64,000 bases of DNA from the IMG/VR virus record IMGVR_UViG_3300032782_000001, positions 124,001 through 188,000 of that record; one strand, 5' to 3'. Of the stretch, positions 5,326-17,806 are shown in pieces (within the stretch, counting starts at the first letter, position 1; each line of letters begins with the position of its first letter). The notes beneath the pieces are model-generated. The model saw only the letters and a program-made list of their open reading frames with translations. It was not told where the DNA came from and made no database searches. The translations under genes were made by a program, and so were the position numbers.

Positions 5326-5374
5326 TCCAGATAATACGTTCAGACTTTGCTGTAAAATGAATCCGGAGGTTTCC

Positions 5375-6041
5375 ATGTCAGTTATTGTAGAGATCAGGGC
5401 CGCCGAAGGCGGAGATGACGCCAAACTCCTCGTTGAGGATCAACTCCGAGTCTATGCGCGCCGCGCGGTTCGGAGGGGTCTTTGACCTTGAAGTAACCGA
5501 ACGCCTTCCGGGCCTCGTCGTCTTCCGGTTAACCGGTAAAGGTGCAGACGAAGCTTGGAAGGATGAAGCCGGTGGACACCGCTGGCAAAGGATTCCCCCA
5601 ACCGAAAAAAGGGGTCGAGTCCAAACGAGCACTGTGACAGTGGCAGTTTTGCCAGAGCCCACAGAAGCTCAGATCCGGATCGATCCGAGGGACATAGAAG
5701 CGTCCACTACTCGTGGATCTGGTCCTGGTGGTCAAAATCGAAATAAAGTGGAAACGTGTGTCATTTTGAAGCACATCCCTACGGGGCTAACTGTTCGTTG
5801 TGAATCTGAGAGATCACAACATCAGAATCGAGCTATTGCCCTGGCACTCCTCCGGGCCAGATTATGGGACGCTGCACAGAAGCAGGCCATTGGAGCTCGT
5901 GATGATAACCGGAAACGTCAAATTGGATCCGGAATGCGTGGAGACAAGAGAAGAACAATTCGATGCCAGGATGGGATAGTCAACGATCACTTGACTGGAA
6001 GACACTGGAACTTCAAAGAATATGAGCGCGGTGACTGGTAA
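5375..6041 (+). CDS. Peptide chain release factor (RF1-like, lacks domain 1), expressed via +1 frameshift at CTT-TGA 5480-5485; about 221 aa
   Basis: SD GGAGGT 5365-70; frame 0 MSVIVEIRAAEGGDDA...RRGL*; +1 frame continues DLEV...GGHRWQRIPPTEKRGRVQTS...GPGGQNRNK...ERSQHQNR. Confidence 0.88.
5472..5486 (+). promoter_or_regulatory. prfB-type programmed +1 frameshift cassette
   Basis: GGAGG-GGT-CTT-TGA-C: internal SD, 3-nt spacer, CUU-UGA-C, as in bacterial prfB. Confidence 0.88.
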
Positions 6042-6404
6042 CTAGCGCTTCATCAAGAAACTCAAAGCCTTATTGTGGAAAGTGACGAGACCTTTACCGG
6101 CCTCGTCTCTCTCTGCAGTTCCGTGGTCGGAAACCAGCCATTTACAGAGGACTTCTCGAGCTTCCACAGCCATGGCCTTTGCTTCATCATCTTCTATTTT
6201 ATCCAGAATATCAATGGTCTCCTCGATCATACCCTGGAAAATAGAATAGGTTCCAGAGATCTTACTCATTCGCTGGCGAAAACTTCGCCAGTTCACTTGC
6301 TGGGTAGAATCTTGGAAACCCTCGGTGCACCAATGACATATGGCGTCGGATTCACCTCCGCAGGCCTCGCAAACCCTAGGTGTATCTGCCGGATCGTCCA
6401 TCAC
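6042..6404 (-). CDS. Hypothetical protein, N-terminal Zn ribbon
   Basis: CEACG...CHWC. Confidence 0.55.
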   Translation of the reverse strand: MMDDPADTPRVCEACGGESDAICHWCTEGFQDSTQQVNWRSFRQRMSKISGTYSIFQGMIEETIDILDKIEDDEAKAMAVEAREVLCKWLVSDHGTAERDEAGKGLVTFHNKALSFLMKR

Positions 6405-6441
6405 AAACTACAGAAGACAAAAGGTCGTTCAAGTGGACGAT

Positions 6442-6942
6442 TTATTTCTTGGCTTTGTCTTCGACTGCCTTGAAATCCGGGGGTATGACAACCGCTGTCT
6501 GCGGATTCATAGAAGGAAGGGGAGGCGGAACAGGAGCAGTAATAACTGGCTTCGGTTTCGGCTTGAGTTTATTCCCTACCGCAGGCGGTGCTGGATGGGG
6601 CGTTCCTGCAGGTGGTTCAGTGGTGGGTTCCGCGGATGCTGCAGCCATGGCTTCTTTGCGAACTTCCCGATCCTTTTTTAGGTATTCGTGAAGCGCTTTA
6701 ATGTCTTCGTTCGTCTTCAAATTTGCTTCAGACAAGTTGGAAATGGACTTCGAGAGCTCTTCATAACTTGCCTTCTGAAGAGAGGTATCCATGGTTTTTA
6801 CGAGCGCAGTGACGGCAGTAATGAGAGCCGTCAGAGCAGTAATCACAACTGCTACTGCTTTGGCCCTAGCGTAGAAATTTTTAGCCTCCGGAGGAATGCT
6901 TTCCTTGGCAGAATCGGGGCCTGAAATTTCTATCTGATTCAT
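6442..6942 (-). CDS. Membrane-anchored coiled-coil protein with Pro-rich tail
   Basis: Hydrophobic segment AVAVVITALTALITAVTALV, then coiled coil. Confidence 0.6.
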   Translation of the reverse strand: MNQIEISGPDSAKESIPPEAKNFYARAKAVAVVITALTALITAVTALVKTMDTSLQKASYEELSKSISNLSEANLKTNEDIKALHEYLKKDREVRKEAMAAASAEPTTEPPAGTPHPAPPAVGNKLKPKPKPVITAPVPPPLPSMNPQTAVVIPPDFKAVEDKAKK

Positions 6943-6973
6943 ATTAGACCCCGCCCATTAGACGTCTCTAATA

Positions 6974-7013
6974 CCTACGACCGCGGAAATTGTGAAATTT
7001 CCGCGGTCGTAGG
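6974..7013. terminator. Perfect 18-bp hairpin, probable terminator of the histone-like gene
   Basis: CCTACGACCGCGGAAATT-GTGA-AATTTCCGCGGTCGTAGG. Confidence 0.7.
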
Positions 7014-7025
7014 AGCCACCTAGCT

Positions 7026-15934: not shown

Positions 15935-16755
15935 TGCAAGGCATTAAACTCATCTTTAGGTCCAAGGAAAATCGAGTTCTCGCCTTCAAGAACGCAGATG
16001 ACTGGGACCTTCCTTCTTGTTCCGTAGAACATGTGGACGAACTCCGAAACTCTACGAGGAATCTTTTCAAGAAGGTAACGGGTGCATTTCCGGATAAAGA
16101 TCCCATCCCTGTGTATCGCGGATACGACGATGAATATGGGGTTTCTTCGTCGTATATTTCGGATTGGACAGGGATCCCGAAAACTAAGAAAGGTCAGAAA
16201 GCAGACTGGGTTGATGTTATCGATATATTATCCAGTAAATGGGGACTTTTTGCCCGGGATGCTTTCCACCGGCTCAAATTGATTAACCGTCCTAAGCTGG
16301 ACTTGGAAGATCTCTACACAATCAGCAAGAAAGCTTTAAAAGACGGATCTCGTCATGCAAGCGAAGGCGTCGACAAAGTCATTGACGAAATTGTTTTCCT
16401 CATGGAGATCAATAAATCTGAGGCAGTAGACAACCTGCTTCAGCATATGGATGTAACCAAACTCCATGCTGATATCTTGTCAGCTGCACTGGCGGTACTA
16501 GAAAATTACGATTTACCTTCAAAAGCAAGATTCGTCGAAGATGCCAACATCATCATTCAGGAAATCGATGCCTTACGTCCAAAAATGAAACTTAAAGATG
16601 AATATGGGAGAATTTTATCTCATGATGTCCGGGGGGATGCCTTGAAATATTATCGCAAGAAAGCTGTTGAATTCGGAAATCTTCTGCGAGAAGGAAAACT
16701 CGGACCAGGCCTCCATCGAGGCGGAGCTCCCATCCCCCGCAGGAAAGCAAATTGA
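15931..16755 (+). CDS. Hypothetical protein (degenerate Nudix-like N-terminus)
   Basis: RVLAFK..DWDLPS, lacks an intact Nudix box. Confidence 0.5.
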   Translation: MMQGIKLIFRSKENRVLAFKNADDWDLPSCSVEHVDELRNSTRNLFKKVTGAFPDKDPIPVYRGYDDEYGVSSSYISDWTGIPKTKKGQKADWVDVIDILSSKWGLFARDAFHRLKLINRPKLDLEDLYTISKKALKDGSRHASEGVDKVIDEIVFLMEINKSEAVDNLLQHMDVTKLHADILSAALAVLENYDLPSKARFVEDANIIIQEIDALRPKMKLKDEYGRILSHDVRGDALKYYRKKAVEFGNLLREGKLGPGLHRGGAPIPRRKAN

Positions 16756-17036
16756 ACTATCAGGAAAAGCAAAGACTCATTCAACAGGCATTGAAAGATA
16801 TGTCTGACGGAAAGAGGAATCTTCTCAGTAATCCTTTCGCCGGTCTCATGCCTCCGAGATTGGATCCTTCAGAAGTCGCCAGAAAAATGTTTCCTATTGA
16901 GCCCCTTCCACAAGGAGCGGTGCCAGTATACTTTCTGCCTCAATGCATAAGATGTGATGGTCATTACGAAGATTTGAAAAATCATTCAATCGAAGAATGT
17001 AATCTTTGCATCGTTGTTGATGTGATGGAGTCATGA
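16752..17036 (+). CDS. Small Zn-binding protein with VMES tag
   Basis: CIRC...H...EECNLCIVVDVMES*. Confidence 0.65.
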   Translation: MNYQEKQRLIQQALKDMSDGKRNLLSNPFAGLMPPRLDPSEVARKMFPIEPLPQGAVPVYFLPQCIRCDGHYEDLKNHSIEECNLCIVVDVMES

Positions 17037-17284
17037 ACGGTCCGAAACGACTCCACTACAGTGATTCTAACAAGTTGACTGCATCCGTCAATAAAATTAG
17101 CCATCTCATGACCAACCACGATTGGGAAGATAAGTCCGAACCAGAGAAGAAAGCGGGCGGACTTATCATTTCTAAAATCGAATTGGAATGTCGTAAATGC
17201 GGATTGGTGGCCGGGTTGCTTCCTCTTGAGGAGTTGGATCGCGATTGCGACATTGTTTTAGTGCGCTCCGTGATGGAGTCATAA
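17033..17284 (+). CDS. Small Zn-binding protein with VMES tag
   Basis: HDW...CRKC...DCDIVLVRSVMES*. Confidence 0.65.
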   Translation: MNGPKRLHYSDSNKLTASVNKISHLMTNHDWEDKSEPEKKAGGLIISKIELECRKCGLVAGLLPLEELDRDCDIVLVRSVMES

Positions 17285-17350
17285 ATTTCTGTTGTAATGT
17301 TGTATCACTAGATAACCCAATCAGGAGGAAGTCATGTAGACTTAGAAATT

Positions 17351-17414
17351 CGGGCGGCAGGGGTGAAGGCCCCGCACCGGTAGGTTAATGGGTTCAAGTC
17401 CCAACCCCGACCCG
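17351..17414 (+). ncRNA. tRNA-like element/pseudo-tRNA directly 5' of tmRNA
   Basis: T-arm TGGG-TTCAAGT-CCCA; ends CGGGCGG/CCGACCCG pair; no clear anticodon arm. Confidence 0.35.
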
Positions 17415-17432
17415 TCTTACCTTTTCCAATTC

Positions 17433-17806
17433 GGGCCTGATCGGCTTCGACTGGGGAAGAAAGAACGATCTGCGTGCAGGCGGCGCTCGATCCGCCATAA
17501 CCAATCGAGCCGACACAGCTGCCAACGACAACGGCGCCCTCCGCATCGCGGCCTAAAAAACCGCGCGGATGTCTTCCCGGCGAAACTGCTTCCAGTAACC
17601 GGATGAAGGCACGAACCCAAGAGGAAGCTGGCCGTGGGAGTAACCCTCCTTTTATCCCGACGCCTCAGCCGGGAAGGCGAGATCAAGTCTAGGCTGACAG
17701 TGCGGAAAGACGCGCAAACTCAGTCGCAGGGGATACGGCGACTACGCACGTGAACGAGGGTTGTTTGGACAACTTCAGGACGCGGGTTCGATTCCCGCCA
17801 GGTCCA
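17433..17806 (+). ncRNA. ssrA: tmRNA, tag (A)ANDNGALRIAA
   Basis: GGGCCTG/CAGGTCC-A acceptor with G3-U70; 5' GA..GGCTTCGAC; T-arm GCGGG-TTCGATT-CCCGC; tag ORF 17521-17556. Confidence 0.95.

What the first reader, a model, noticed from the sequence alone, without database searches (positions are those of the whole stretch)
5365..17806. Candidate integrated UGA/termination-stress circuit
Within about 12.5 kb lie a UGA-frameshift-gated RF, a UGA-gated leader upstream of a Pth2-like gene, two UCA tRNAs and tmRNA. Three independent elements centre on the single codon that only RF2 reads. Inference: the phage monitors or manipulates RF2 activity (host defence shutdown or self-inflicted suppression) and switches on its own termination and rescue machinery.
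Basis: inference. Interest (0 to 1): 0.88.

Follow-up and report, generated by a model that had tools for sequence, protein, structure and literature searches.

The report
Frameshift-gated short release factor in phage
A 436-kb phage carries a real release-factor gene that needs a +1 ribosomal frameshift at a UGA stop, plus two UGA-reading tRNAs and a tmRNA. These are separate parts of a large translation-gene island, not one UGA circuit, and the gated factor belongs to a large, seemingly undescribed family found in huge phages and in bacteria.

Summary
Three of the four claimed elements are real: the release-factor (RF) gene split at GGAGG-GGT-CUU-UGA-C, two tRNAs with UCA anticodons, and a tmRNA. 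The "UGA-gated leader" of the Pth2-like gene is not. That gene's GTG start overlaps a UAG stop, and the only UGA nearby ends a chance-level 5-codon mini-ORF.

The stretch is the edge of a translation island of at least 42 kb (at least 42 tRNAs, EF-Tu, a HisRS-like fragment), interleaved with pyrimidine genes.

The RF is RF1-type, not RF2-type, and lacks domain 1. It belongs to a large family (thousands of protein clusters) in huge phages and in bacterial chromosomes, mainly Myxococcota. The same CUU-stop shift site recurs there with UGA, UAG or UAA, and some members have in-frame stops instead. The closest phage relative uses UAA. UCA tRNAs are absent around the RF gene of every other phage examined.

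About 116 kb of this genome, including a probable tail module, reads in the standard code, with UGA the commonest stop in the window.

Verdict: the integrated UGA circuit is not supported. A frameshift gate that senses termination speed is plausible. The family is a new variant of prfB-type recoding and worth follow-up.

The parts
5365..5369 (+). Shine-Dalgarno GGAGG of the release-factor gene, 5 nt before ATG 5375
   Evidence: sequence read directly
5375..5485 (+). RF gene, frame-0 part: 36 codons, then the in-frame TGA at 5483-5485. It encodes the start of RF domain 2, including the EIRAAEGGDDA helix tip.
   Evidence: Pfam PCRF positions 101-134; NCBIfam prfA 105-145. The piece is conserved in frame 0 in 41 loci and ends at the CTT in most of them.
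5472..5486 (+). Programmed +1 frameshift cassette: GGAGG, GGT, CTT, TGA, C
   Evidence: One match in the window against 0.09 expected. The same cassette sits at the same spot in about 40 distinct phage and bacterial loci.
5484..6041 (+). RF gene, +1 frame part: 185 codons plus TAA. It covers the rest of domain 2 (decoding loop with PPT), the GGQ domain 3, and domain 4.
   Evidence: Pfam PCRF 153-194 and RF-1. PDB RF1 139 bits against RF2 81 bits. prfA 183 > prfB 119 > prfH 79 bits.
10863..10937 (+). tRNA-Ile with anticodon UAU
12039..12067 (+). Best sigma-70-like promoter match in the region (TTGACA, 17 nt, TATCAT), upstream of the orf12172/Pth2-like pair
   Evidence: 11 of 12 positions. A consensus match only.
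12077..12094 (+). 5-codon mini-ORF (MKHHL) ending in TGA at the predicted transcript start. Judged to be chance.
   Evidence: sequence read. No Shine-Dalgarno sequence and no homologous upstream region in relatives.
12172..12588 (+). 138-aa ORF of unknown function with a strong Shine-Dalgarno sequence. It ends in TAG, which overlaps the GTG start of the next gene.
   Evidence: No family hit.
12588..12926 (+). Pth2-like gene: a distant member of the PTH2 fold family, with its start apparently coupled to the stop of the upstream ORF
   Evidence: PF01981 35.3 bits (cutoff 23). phrog_1866 3e-17. NCBIfam Pth2 only 24.7 bits against a 126 cutoff. PDB Pth2 E=0.18.
15122..15198 (+). tRNA with anticodon UCA (reads UGA). 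Discriminator U73, encoded CCA, weak anticodon stem (G27.A43 and U31.U39).
   Evidence: (56.7 bits)
15223..15296 (+). Second, unrelated tRNA with anticodon UCA. Discriminator G73, no encoded CCA, C31.U39 mismatch.
   Evidence: (55.1 bits). 64% identical to the first.
17433..17809 (+). One-piece tmRNA. Tag ANDNGALRIAA, tag ORF ends in TAA, G3:U70 alanine identity pair present.
   Evidence: (111.9 bits, E 7e-43)

Best explanation
The 12.5-kb stretch is the distal edge of a translation-gene island of at least 42 kb in a 436-kb phage. Its parts are separate genes, not one regulated circuit.

The release-factor gene is a true recoded gene.
- Ribosomes start at ATG 5375, read 36 codons, and meet CUU-UGA-C three bases after a GGAGG.
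- If UGA is decoded slowly, the P-site tRNA-Leu slips from CUU to UUU and translation continues in the +1 frame.
- The product is a 221-aa RF1-type factor with domains 2-4, a GGQ motif and a PPT tripeptide, but no domain 1.
- If UGA is decoded quickly, by RF2 or by a UGA-reading tRNA, only a short dead-end peptide results.
- The gate therefore makes output rise when termination at that codon is slow (inferred from prfB).

The gate was inherited with the gene from a large family present in huge phages and in bacterial chromosomes. In that family the gating stop may be UGA, UAG or UAA. What is sensed is therefore best described as termination capacity, not RF2 as such.

The other parts:
- The two tRNA(UCA) genes are real opal-suppressor-type tRNAs of unknown charging identity and unknown target.
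- The tmRNA is an ordinary huge-phage rescue RNA.
- The Pth2-like gene is a remote PTH2-fold relative.

Shown: the anatomy, the conservation, the family distribution, and standard-code use over about 116 kb. Inferred: the slippage mechanism, the sensing function, and the factor's codon specificity.
For: Anatomy and HMM continuity of the two RF pieces.

RF1-type, not RF2 or PrfH:
- PDB RF1 139 bits against RF2 81 bits.
- prfA 183, prfB 119, prfH 79 bits.
- An AlphaFold model of an ungated family member has pLDDT 86. Its best structural matches are RF1, with E 5e-18 over the whole length.

The cassette is conserved at the same column in phage loci down to 42% protein identity. It is also present in Minicystis rosea, Byssovorax and other bacterial contigs.

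Gate codons across the family:
- 40 distinct shift sites: TGA 28, TAG 11, TAA 1. The base after the stop is C in 30. GGAGG lies exactly 3 nt upstream in about half.
- 76 called homologues: inferred TGA 62, TAG 12, TAA 2.
- On the tree, the window's RF groups with Polyangiaceae chromosomal copies (support 97/89), and the gate type changes many times.

Island context:
- 39 tRNAs, EF-Tu and a HisRS-like fragment lie 14-30 kb upstream.
- pyrC, pyrE and a pyrD-like gene are interleaved with the claimed elements.

Standard code:
- 91% coding density in the window. TGA ends 44 of 86 genes, with no backup stops.
- No excess of in-frame gene pairs after TGA.
- Long intact ORFs, including a probable tail module, continue to contig position 216 kb.

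Independent distribution of tRNA(UCA), tmRNA and Pth2-like genes among relatives.
Against: - Nothing here is experimental. Frameshift efficiency and its dependence on RF2 are inferred from prfB.
- The factor's codon specificity is only predicted. The third tripeptide residue varies (T, N, S, G) in close homologues, so RF1-like reading of UAA and UAG may not hold.
- Only about 27% of the genome was seen. Genes with in-frame UGA could lie in the remaining 320 kb.
- The window pairs a UGA gate with UCA tRNAs, and locus L024 pairs a UAG gate with a CUA tRNA. This leaves room for a link between gate and suppressor in some phages.
- Pth2-like genes recur near the RF gene in three distant relatives, so some functional association among translation-rescue genes is possible.
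- The two assemblies that carry this phage may derive from the same reads.
Confidence: 0.6

Rival explanations
1. Code-switch module, as in TGA-recoded Jade phages. The suppressor tRNA(UCA) pair plus an RF1-type factor would reassign UGA late in infection, so that late genes with in-frame UGA can be read while UAA and UAG termination is reinforced.
For: The same combination (RF1 plus a TGA suppressor tRNA, there with TrpRS) is described as code-change machinery in bioRxiv 10.1101/2021.08.26.457843. The window has two distinct UCA tRNAs and an RF1-type factor. 73% of the genome was not examined.
Against: - About 116 kb, including a probable tail module, reads as long intact ORFs in the standard code.
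- TGA is the commonest stop, 44 of 86 genes, with no backup stops.
- No gene in the window was shown to carry an in-frame TGA.
- No TrpRS was seen.
- GC content is 49%, unlike the low-GC recoded phages.
- Active suppression would shut the RF gate rather than open it.
Confidence: 0.15
2. RF gate, Pth2 leader, UCA tRNAs and tmRNA would jointly respond to, or cause, loss of RF2 activity.
For: The UGA gate and the two UGA-reading tRNAs lie 9.6 kb apart. Rescue-type genes (tmRNA, Pth2-like) are nearby. Pth2-like genes also lie near the RF gene in L035, L036 and L046.
Against: - There is no UGA leader at the Pth2-like gene.
- The elements are separated by unrelated genes on both strands, including pyrC, pyrE, a pyrD-like gene, an ATP-grasp gene, a VanW gene and a TPM gene.
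- The gate is ancestral and also present in bacterial chromosomes.
- The gate codon is UAA in the nearest phage relative.
- tRNA(UCA) is absent near the RF gene of all other phage loci.
Confidence: 0.08
3. The gate is only a fixed attenuator. The shift site keeps a potentially toxic release factor at a low, roughly constant level and senses nothing.
For: - RF overexpression is harmful in B. subtilis (PMC12421855).
- Any of the three stops serves as a gate, and the decoding loop does not change with the gate codon.
- Ungated members exist: L034, P0030 and P0113.
Against: - The cassette keeps every element that makes prfB frameshifting responsive to termination rate: a Shine-Dalgarno-like sequence 3 nt upstream, CUU, and a weak stop followed by C.
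- UAA, the most efficiently terminated stop, is rare: 1 of 40 sites and 2 of 76 homologues.
- Some members stack two gates. That fits an off-unless-termination-fails switch better than a mild attenuator.
Confidence: 0.12
4. The split is a pseudogene or an assembly error.
For: Gene callers annotate only the 195-aa downstream piece.
Against: - The split falls at the same column, with a canonical cassette, in dozens of divergent phage and bacterial sequences.
- The upstream piece is conserved as protein in frame 0.
- The sequence is identical in a second assembly.
Confidence: 0.02

Closest known systems
prfB (RF2) programmed +1 frameshift autoregulation in bacteria
   Same: The cassette architecture is the same: a Shine-Dalgarno-like sequence 3 nt upstream, a CUU P-site codon, an in-frame stop followed by C, and a +1 shift into the main ORF of a class-I release factor.
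   Different: - The gene is RF1-type (PPT, not SPF) and lacks domain 1.
- The site lies at the end of the first helix of domain 2, not at codon ~26 in domain 1. The position is not homologous.
- The gating stop can be UGA, UAG or UAA. In prfB, TAG was never seen among 8,164 motif-bearing genomes, and no programmed shift was found in prfA (PMC12421855).
- With UGA as the gate, an RF1-type product would be cross-regulated by RF2, not autoregulated.
Mimivirus R726 / Megavirus mg280 release-factor gene (UGA-C readthrough plus CUU-UAG-C or CUU-UAA-C frameshift)
   Same: Both are virus-encoded class-I release factors whose synthesis needs recoding at stop codons. The CUU-stop-C shift motif is the same, and the gate codon varies between relatives. 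Some phage members likewise combine an in-frame stop with a shift (L046) or carry two in-frame stops (PMC3521657).
   Different: The giant-virus factor is an eRF1-type omnipotent factor in a eukaryotic host. The factor here has the bacterial RF1 fold, occurs in phages and bacteria, and has unknown specificity.
Code-change machinery of TGA-recoded Jade phages (TrpRS + tRNA-Sup(TGA) + RF1)
   Same: An RF1-type gene and UGA suppressor tRNA genes occur in one phage.
   Different: No recoded genes appear in the 116 kb examined. No TrpRS is present. The RF is short and frameshift-gated. UGA is the phage's commonest stop in the window.
PrfH (RF-H) with RtcB
   Same: A class-I RF paralogue of about 200 aa that lacks domain 1.
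   Different: The prfH model scores 79 bits against a cutoff of 167. No RtcB neighbour is present. The RF1-like decoding loop is retained.
Translation-gene islands of huge phages (Al-Shayeb 2020) and the tRNA(UCA) of Agrobacterium jumbo phage Atu_ph07
   Same: tRNA arrays, EF-Tu, RF1/RF2, tmRNA and aaRS genes occur in phages over 200 kb (PMC7162821). Atu_ph07 carries a UCA suppressor tRNA in a standard-code genome rich in UGA stops (PMC6102473). Several of the published huge-phage genomes carry this same gated RF, unannotated.
   Different: None of these papers mentions recoding in the RF gene. This phage has two different UCA tRNAs.

Membership tests
Bacterial class-I release factor, RF1 type | PCRF and RF-1 domains with a GGQ motif | tested here: met
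   PF03462 and PF00472 match. GGQ is present in 'GPGGQNRNK'. The model of an ungated member matches RF1 structures at E 5e-18.
Bacterial class-I release factor, RF1 type | PxT tripeptide with RF1-type flanks (Q before it, TS after it), rather than SPF | tested here: met
   The window has 'WQRIPPTEKRGRVQTS', which aligns to RF1 'VQRVPVTE..RIHTS'. In close homologues the T is often N, S or G.
Bacterial class-I release factor, RF1 type | N-terminal domain 1 and full-length equivalog score | tested here: not met
   The product begins at profile position ~105 of 347-361. prfA scores 183 bits against a 423 cutoff.
Bacterial class-I release factor, RF1 type | Release activity restricted to UAA and UAG | not testable with these tools
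   Needs in vitro release assays.
prfB-type programmed +1 frameshift | Shine-Dalgarno-like element 3 nt upstream, CUU, in-frame stop followed by C, and main ORF in the +1 frame | tested here: met
   GGAGG-GGT-CTT-TGA-C at 5472-5486. Conserved in 40 distinct sites.
prfB-type programmed +1 frameshift | The gate codon is read by the encoded factor itself (autoregulation), always UGA | tested here: not met
   The factor is RF1-like. Family gates are UGA, UAG and UAA, with an unchanged decoding loop.
prfB-type programmed +1 frameshift | Site near codon 26 in domain 1 of an RF2 gene | tested here: not met
   The site falls at profile position ~135-150, in domain 2 of an RF1-type gene.
prfB-type programmed +1 frameshift | Frameshifting occurs and rises when the cognate RF is scarce | not testable with these tools
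   Needs a reporter assay or mass spectrometry.
PrfH / RtcB rescue module | prfH model at its cutoff, and an adjacent rtcB gene | tested here: not met
   79 bits against 166.65. Neighbours are a GIY-YIG gene and unknown ORFs.
Phage stop-codon recoding (code 4) module | Suppressor tRNA for the recoded stop | tested here: met
   Two tRNA(UCA) genes.
Phage stop-codon recoding (code 4) module | Genes with in-frame TGA, and better gene models when TGA is read as sense | tested here: not met
   Standard-code density is 0.91, against 0.90 with TGA as sense. No proven case in the window. Intact long ORFs over contig positions 99.7-216 kb. 320 kb was not examined.
tRNA-Sec (ARAGORN's label for these tRNAs) | Long variable arm and extended acceptor/T-stem geometry | tested here: not met
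   Both are 74-77 nt class-I cloverleaves with 4-5 nt variable loops.
tmRNA | Rfam RF00023 at its gathering score, tRNA-like ends with G3:U70, and an internal tag ORF | tested here: met
   111.9 bits against a gathering score of 47. Tag ANDNGALRIAA ends in TAA, and G3:U70 was read. No SmpB was found among the ORFs scanned.
Peptidyl-tRNA hydrolase Pth2 | PTH2 domain at Pfam gathering score | tested here: met
   35.3 bits against 23.
Peptidyl-tRNA hydrolase Pth2 | Equivalog-level score and conserved catalytic residues | tested here: inconclusive
   NCBIfam 24.7 bits against 126. PDB Pth2 E=0.18, and the Lys-rich motif is not obviously kept.

The most novel reading that the evidence does not exclude
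The short RF1-fold factors with a PP[T/N/S/G] tripeptide may form an undescribed class of release or rescue factor with relaxed or omnipotent stop recognition. Their synthesis would be autoregulated by recoding at whichever stop codon sits in the gate: a CUU-stop +1 shift, or in-frame UGA or UAG readthrough. Huge phages would carry the factor to keep termination going when host release factors are limiting or attacked. If so, this would be the first programmed frameshift in the RF1 lineage. It would also be the in-frame-stop autoregulation once predicted for RF genes and listed as unknown in the 2016 recoding review (PMC5009743).
Probability: 0.25. Interest if true: 0.85.

Novelty: new variant of a known kind. 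Interest (0 to 1): 0.68.

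Why it matters
prfB frameshifting is the textbook case of autoregulatory recoding. A 2025 survey of more than 12,000 bacterial genomes concluded that prfA has no programmed shift and that the prfB gate is never UAG (PMC12421855).

Here the same cassette sits at a different position in an RF1-type, domain-1-less paralogue. That paralogue is abundant in metagenomes, in several of the largest published phage genomes, and in at least one complete bacterial chromosome (Minicystis rosea). The gate uses UGA, UAG or UAA.

This decouples the cassette from RF2 autoregulation. It raises two testable questions: what these factors recognise, and why huge phages carry them.

For annotation, the family is currently called as a truncated 170-215-aa protein or left unannotated.

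For this window specifically, the attractive "UGA circuit" reading should not be propagated. What remains open is why a standard-code phage carries two opal suppressor tRNAs.

Tried and rejected
- DNA searches of the 12.6-kb region, the RF gene and the tmRNA against GenBank phages found nothing.
- Tests for TGA recoding in the window were all negative. These covered ORF tiling under alternative codes, coding-potential scoring of read-through extensions, Pfam on same-frame neighbour pairs, backup-stop distances, and in-frame adjacency by stop type.
- The isotype of the UCA tRNAs could not be assigned by similarity to 584 tRNAs of relatives or to this phage's own 39 tRNAs.
- Attempts to reach other parts of the contig through HNH paralogues or dispersed repeats failed. 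A search for relatives through the ORF between the tRNAs and the tmRNA found only the contig itself.
- One look-up failed on a mis-guessed gene start.
- Crude coding-density comparison of relatives with in-frame stops in their RF genes showed no genome-wide recoding signal, but it is confounded by tRNA arrays.
- A link between gate codon and decoding-loop sequence or tripeptide was sought and not found.
- tRNA-Sec, PrfH and ArfB identities were considered and rejected.
- The joined RF protein was never submitted to any tool. The pieces were searched apart, and an ungated homologue was folded instead.

Full report
**What the window is.** The window is part of IMG/VR contig IMGVR_UViG_3300032782_000001, which is 436,316 bp long. 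Window position equals contig position minus 124,000. The same sequence occurs in an ENA assembly contig of 337 kb and is identical over the RF gene. No GenBank phage matches the region at the DNA level.

**The release-factor gene.**
- A GGAGG at 5365-5369 precedes ATG 5375. Frame 0 runs for 36 codons to CTT (5480-5482) and TGA (5483-5485).
- The +1 frame then stays open from GAC 5484 to TAA 6041.
- The junction reads GGAGG-GGT-CTT-TGA-C. This is the architecture of the prfB shift site. It occurs once in the window, against 0.09 expected.
- Searched apart, the 36-aa piece matches PCRF positions 101-134. The 185-aa piece matches PCRF 153-194 plus the RF-1 domain. The two pieces are therefore consecutive parts of one protein.
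- The protein is RF1-type. PDB RF1 chains score 139 bits against 81 for RF2. NCBIfam gives prfA 183, prfB 119 and prfH 79 bits. The decoding loop 'WQRIPPTEKRGRVQTS' aligns with the RF1 PxT loop.
- Domain 1 is absent. An AlphaFold model of a natural ungated homologue (pLDDT 86) matches RF1 structures over its whole length at E 5e-18.

**The gate is inherited, not a feature of this phage.**
- A scan of viral contigs found 48 phage loci encoding this short factor, about 40 of them distinct. Nearly all come from contigs of 50-480 kb.
- Most carry CTT-TGA at exactly the same column, usually with CGGAGG three bases upstream. This holds down to 42% protein identity.
- Other arrangements also occur:
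  - CTT-TAG at that column in L021, L023, L024 and L033.
  - A CTT-TAG shift at a second column in L029 and L046.
  - One or two in-frame TGA codons in L018, L025, L035-L037, L043, L044 and L047.
  - An in-frame TGA plus an in-frame TAG in L038-L040.
  - An in-frame TAG in L012.
  - No gate at all in L034.
- Published huge-phage genomes show the same range. LR745208 (485 kb) has the window's cassette. LR756501 (735 kb) has two in-frame TGA codons. LR756502 (642 kb) has one.
- A protein search gave 4,494 clusters at E<=1e-10 in the 102-324 aa size range. They include chromosomal genes of Minicystis rosea (16-Mb chromosome), Byssovorax, and a 1.37-Mb MAG contig where the gene lies a few genes from mraZ and rsmH. 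All three carry the same CTT-TGA-C split.
- The genome scan added Kofleriaceae, Nannocystaceae, Bryobacterales and Chthonomonadaceae copies, mostly with CTT-TAG-C.
- The closest phage relative (L144, 77% identity) has CTT-TAA-C.
- Over 40 distinct shift sites the stop is TGA 28, TAG 11 and TAA 1, and the next base is C in 30.
- The +1-frame N-terminal extensions of 76 called homologues imply TGA 62, TAG 12 and TAA 2.
- On a maximum-likelihood tree the window's factor groups with the Polyangiaceae chromosomal copies (support 97/89). Gate types are interspersed; for example, L027 (TGA) and L033 (TAG) are sisters.
- The decoding loop is the same whatever the gate codon. In close homologues the third tripeptide residue varies among T, N, S and G, with no relation to the gate.

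**Literature.**
- A 2025 survey found no programmed shift in prfA and never TAG in the prfB motif (PMC12421855).
- The 2016 recoding review lists in-frame UGA or UAG autoregulation of RF genes as unknown in bacteria (PMC5009743).
- The GeneTack study lists only prfB among RF genes (PMC3711429).
- The huge-phage paper mentions RF1 and RF2 genes but not recoding (PMC7162821).
- The nearest precedent is the Mimivirus and Megavirus eRF1-type gene, with UGA-C readthrough plus a CUU-UAG-C or CUU-UAA-C shift (PMC3521657).
- I found no description of this family in the searchable library. That is not proof that none exists.

**The tRNAs.**
- Both UCA tRNAs are supported by ARAGORN and by Rfam, at 56.7 and 55.1 bits.
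- They are ordinary class-I cloverleaves, not tRNA-Sec. They are only 64% identical to each other.
- One has U73 and an encoded CCA; the other has G73 and no CCA.
- Both have a non-Watson-Crick 31-39 pair.
- Their amino-acid identity could not be inferred.
- No other phage locus has a UCA tRNA within 10 kb of its RF gene. Three have a CUA tRNA: L024 (UAG gate), L026 (UGA gate) and L035 (in-frame UGA). Suppressor and gate codon are therefore not consistently matched.
- A UCA suppressor in a standard-code jumbo phage has a precedent in Atu_ph07 (PMC6102473).

**Genetic code.**
- In the window the standard code gives 91% coding density.
- TGA ends 44 of 86 genes. There is no enrichment of nearby backup stops and no excess of in-frame downstream genes.
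- No gene could be shown to contain an in-frame TGA.
- Walking along the contig gave 39 tRNAs, EF-Tu, a truncated HisRS-like gene and an M16 peptidase at 99.7-120 kb.
- From 188 to 216 kb it gave a run of long intact ORFs of 882, 1516, 1552 and more than 2100 aa, with weak tail-protein matches.
- A Borges-type code switch is therefore not visible in the 27% of the genome examined.

**The Pth2-like gene and its supposed leader.**
- The 112-aa ORF at 12588-12926 passes the Pfam PTH2 threshold. It is far below the NCBIfam Pth2 cutoff and only faintly similar to solved Pth2 structures.
- Its GTG start overlaps the TAG stop of a 138-aa ORF that has a strong Shine-Dalgarno sequence.
- The best promoter-like site of the region lies at 12039-12067.
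- A 5-codon ORF ending in TGA (12077-12094) sits at the predicted transcript start. It has no Shine-Dalgarno sequence and no conserved counterpart. Such a mini-ORF is expected by chance in a 100-nt leader.
- Pth2-like genes do lie near the RF gene in L035, L036 and L046.

**tmRNA.** It is a standard one-piece tmRNA (111.9 bits) with a G3:U70 pair and a tag ORF ending in TAA. Among relatives, tmRNAs lie within 10 kb of the RF gene only in L006 and L029/L030.

**Context inside the 12.5 kb.** The claimed elements are separated by pyrC, pyrE, a pyrD-like gene, an R2K ATP-grasp gene, a TPM-domain gene and a VanW-domain gene, on both strands. Apart from the RF gene, relatives show no synteny with this stretch.

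**Mechanism.**
- Shown: the cassette, its conservation, and the continuity of the protein across it.
- Inferred from prfB: slow decoding of the A-site UGA lets the P-site tRNA-Leu re-pair from CUU to UUU, helped by the upstream GGAGG pairing with 16S rRNA. Output therefore rises when UGA termination is slow.
- A UGA-reading tRNA at the gate would carry the ribosome on in frame 0 to a second TGA two codons later and a TAA soon after. The phage's own suppressors would therefore lower, not raise, production of the factor.
- The family uses any stop as the gate with an unchanged decoding loop. The gate therefore either senses general termination capacity, or the factor reads all stops and is autoregulated. 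Sequence alone cannot decide between these.

**Verdict.** The RF gene is a genuine and interesting case: a prfB-like recoding cassette in a widespread short RF1-type paralogue.

Noticed in passing
window 8862-10813 and 13606-14184: De novo pyrimidine genes lie in the middle of the claimed circuit: a pyrD-like gene (8862-9812), pyrC (9764-10813, 374 bits, above the equivalog cutoff) and pyrE (13606-14184, 135 bits).
   Followed up: partly
L142 (contig 99,706-120,017): 412-15460; 1912-3063; 12258-14257: The region holds 39 tRNA genes, a full EF-Tu gene (467 bits) and a 201-aa truncated HisRS-like ORF just after an HNH endonuclease gene. The HisRS-like ORF may be an aaRS gene split or eroded by a homing element.
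   Followed up: partly
L038-L040, L037, L018, L035; L151 (LR756501, the 735-kb phage); L152: The RF genes of these phages carry one or two in-frame stops instead of a shift. L038 has TAG at the column where its close relative L037 has TGA. LR756502 has Tyr where LR756501 has TGA. The conserved feature looks like the stop itself, not an amino acid.
   Followed up: partly
proteins P0004-P0013 and others: The third residue of the 'tripeptide anticodon' varies (PPT, PPN, PPS, PPG) among homologues at least 61% identical to the window's factor. This hints at relaxed or altered codon recognition.
   Followed up: partly
L144:10015-10040: The nearest phage relative of the window's RF (77% identity) has CTT-TAA-C at the shift site. 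This rests on a single Logan contig.
   Followed up: no
L057 (Minicystis rosea CP016211), L058, L061, L145: The window's RF is most similar to chromosomal copies in Polyangiaceae (Myxococcota), and the tmRNA tag begins ANDN. The host may be a myxobacterium despite the GC gap (49% against 67-73%).
   Followed up: no
window 3580-4539, 18426-19082, 19786-20349: One GIY-YIG and two HNH endonuclease genes, likely homing endonucleases, flank the region.
   Followed up: no
window 7029-7120 and 49978-50160: Short tandem or dispersed 12-18-nt repeats lie inside ORFs (CTTCTTGGCTGCCTTCTT-type, and a GC-rich repeat). They probably encode repetitive peptide segments.
   Followed up: no
window 28751-29953, 51734-52399, 36164-37555, 55284-58181, 58229-59413, 39274-39879, 42243-43232, 43983-44633: The rest of the window encodes two sigma-70-family factors, RecA, family-A DNA polymerase, DnaJ, a ferritin-like protein, a papain-family protease and a pyroglutamyl peptidase.
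   Followed up: no
window 15122-15296: Both UCA tRNAs have a mismatched 31-39 pair (U.U and C.U), which effectively gives 9-nt anticodon loops. The first also has G27.A43. The effect on decoding is unknown.
   Followed up: partly
L149 (contig 193,242-215,890): Four adjacent paralogous-looking genes of 309-319 aa lie beside giant ORFs (882 to more than 2100 aa) with weak tail-fibre hits. This is a probable tail module, and it reads in the standard code.
   Followed up: partly
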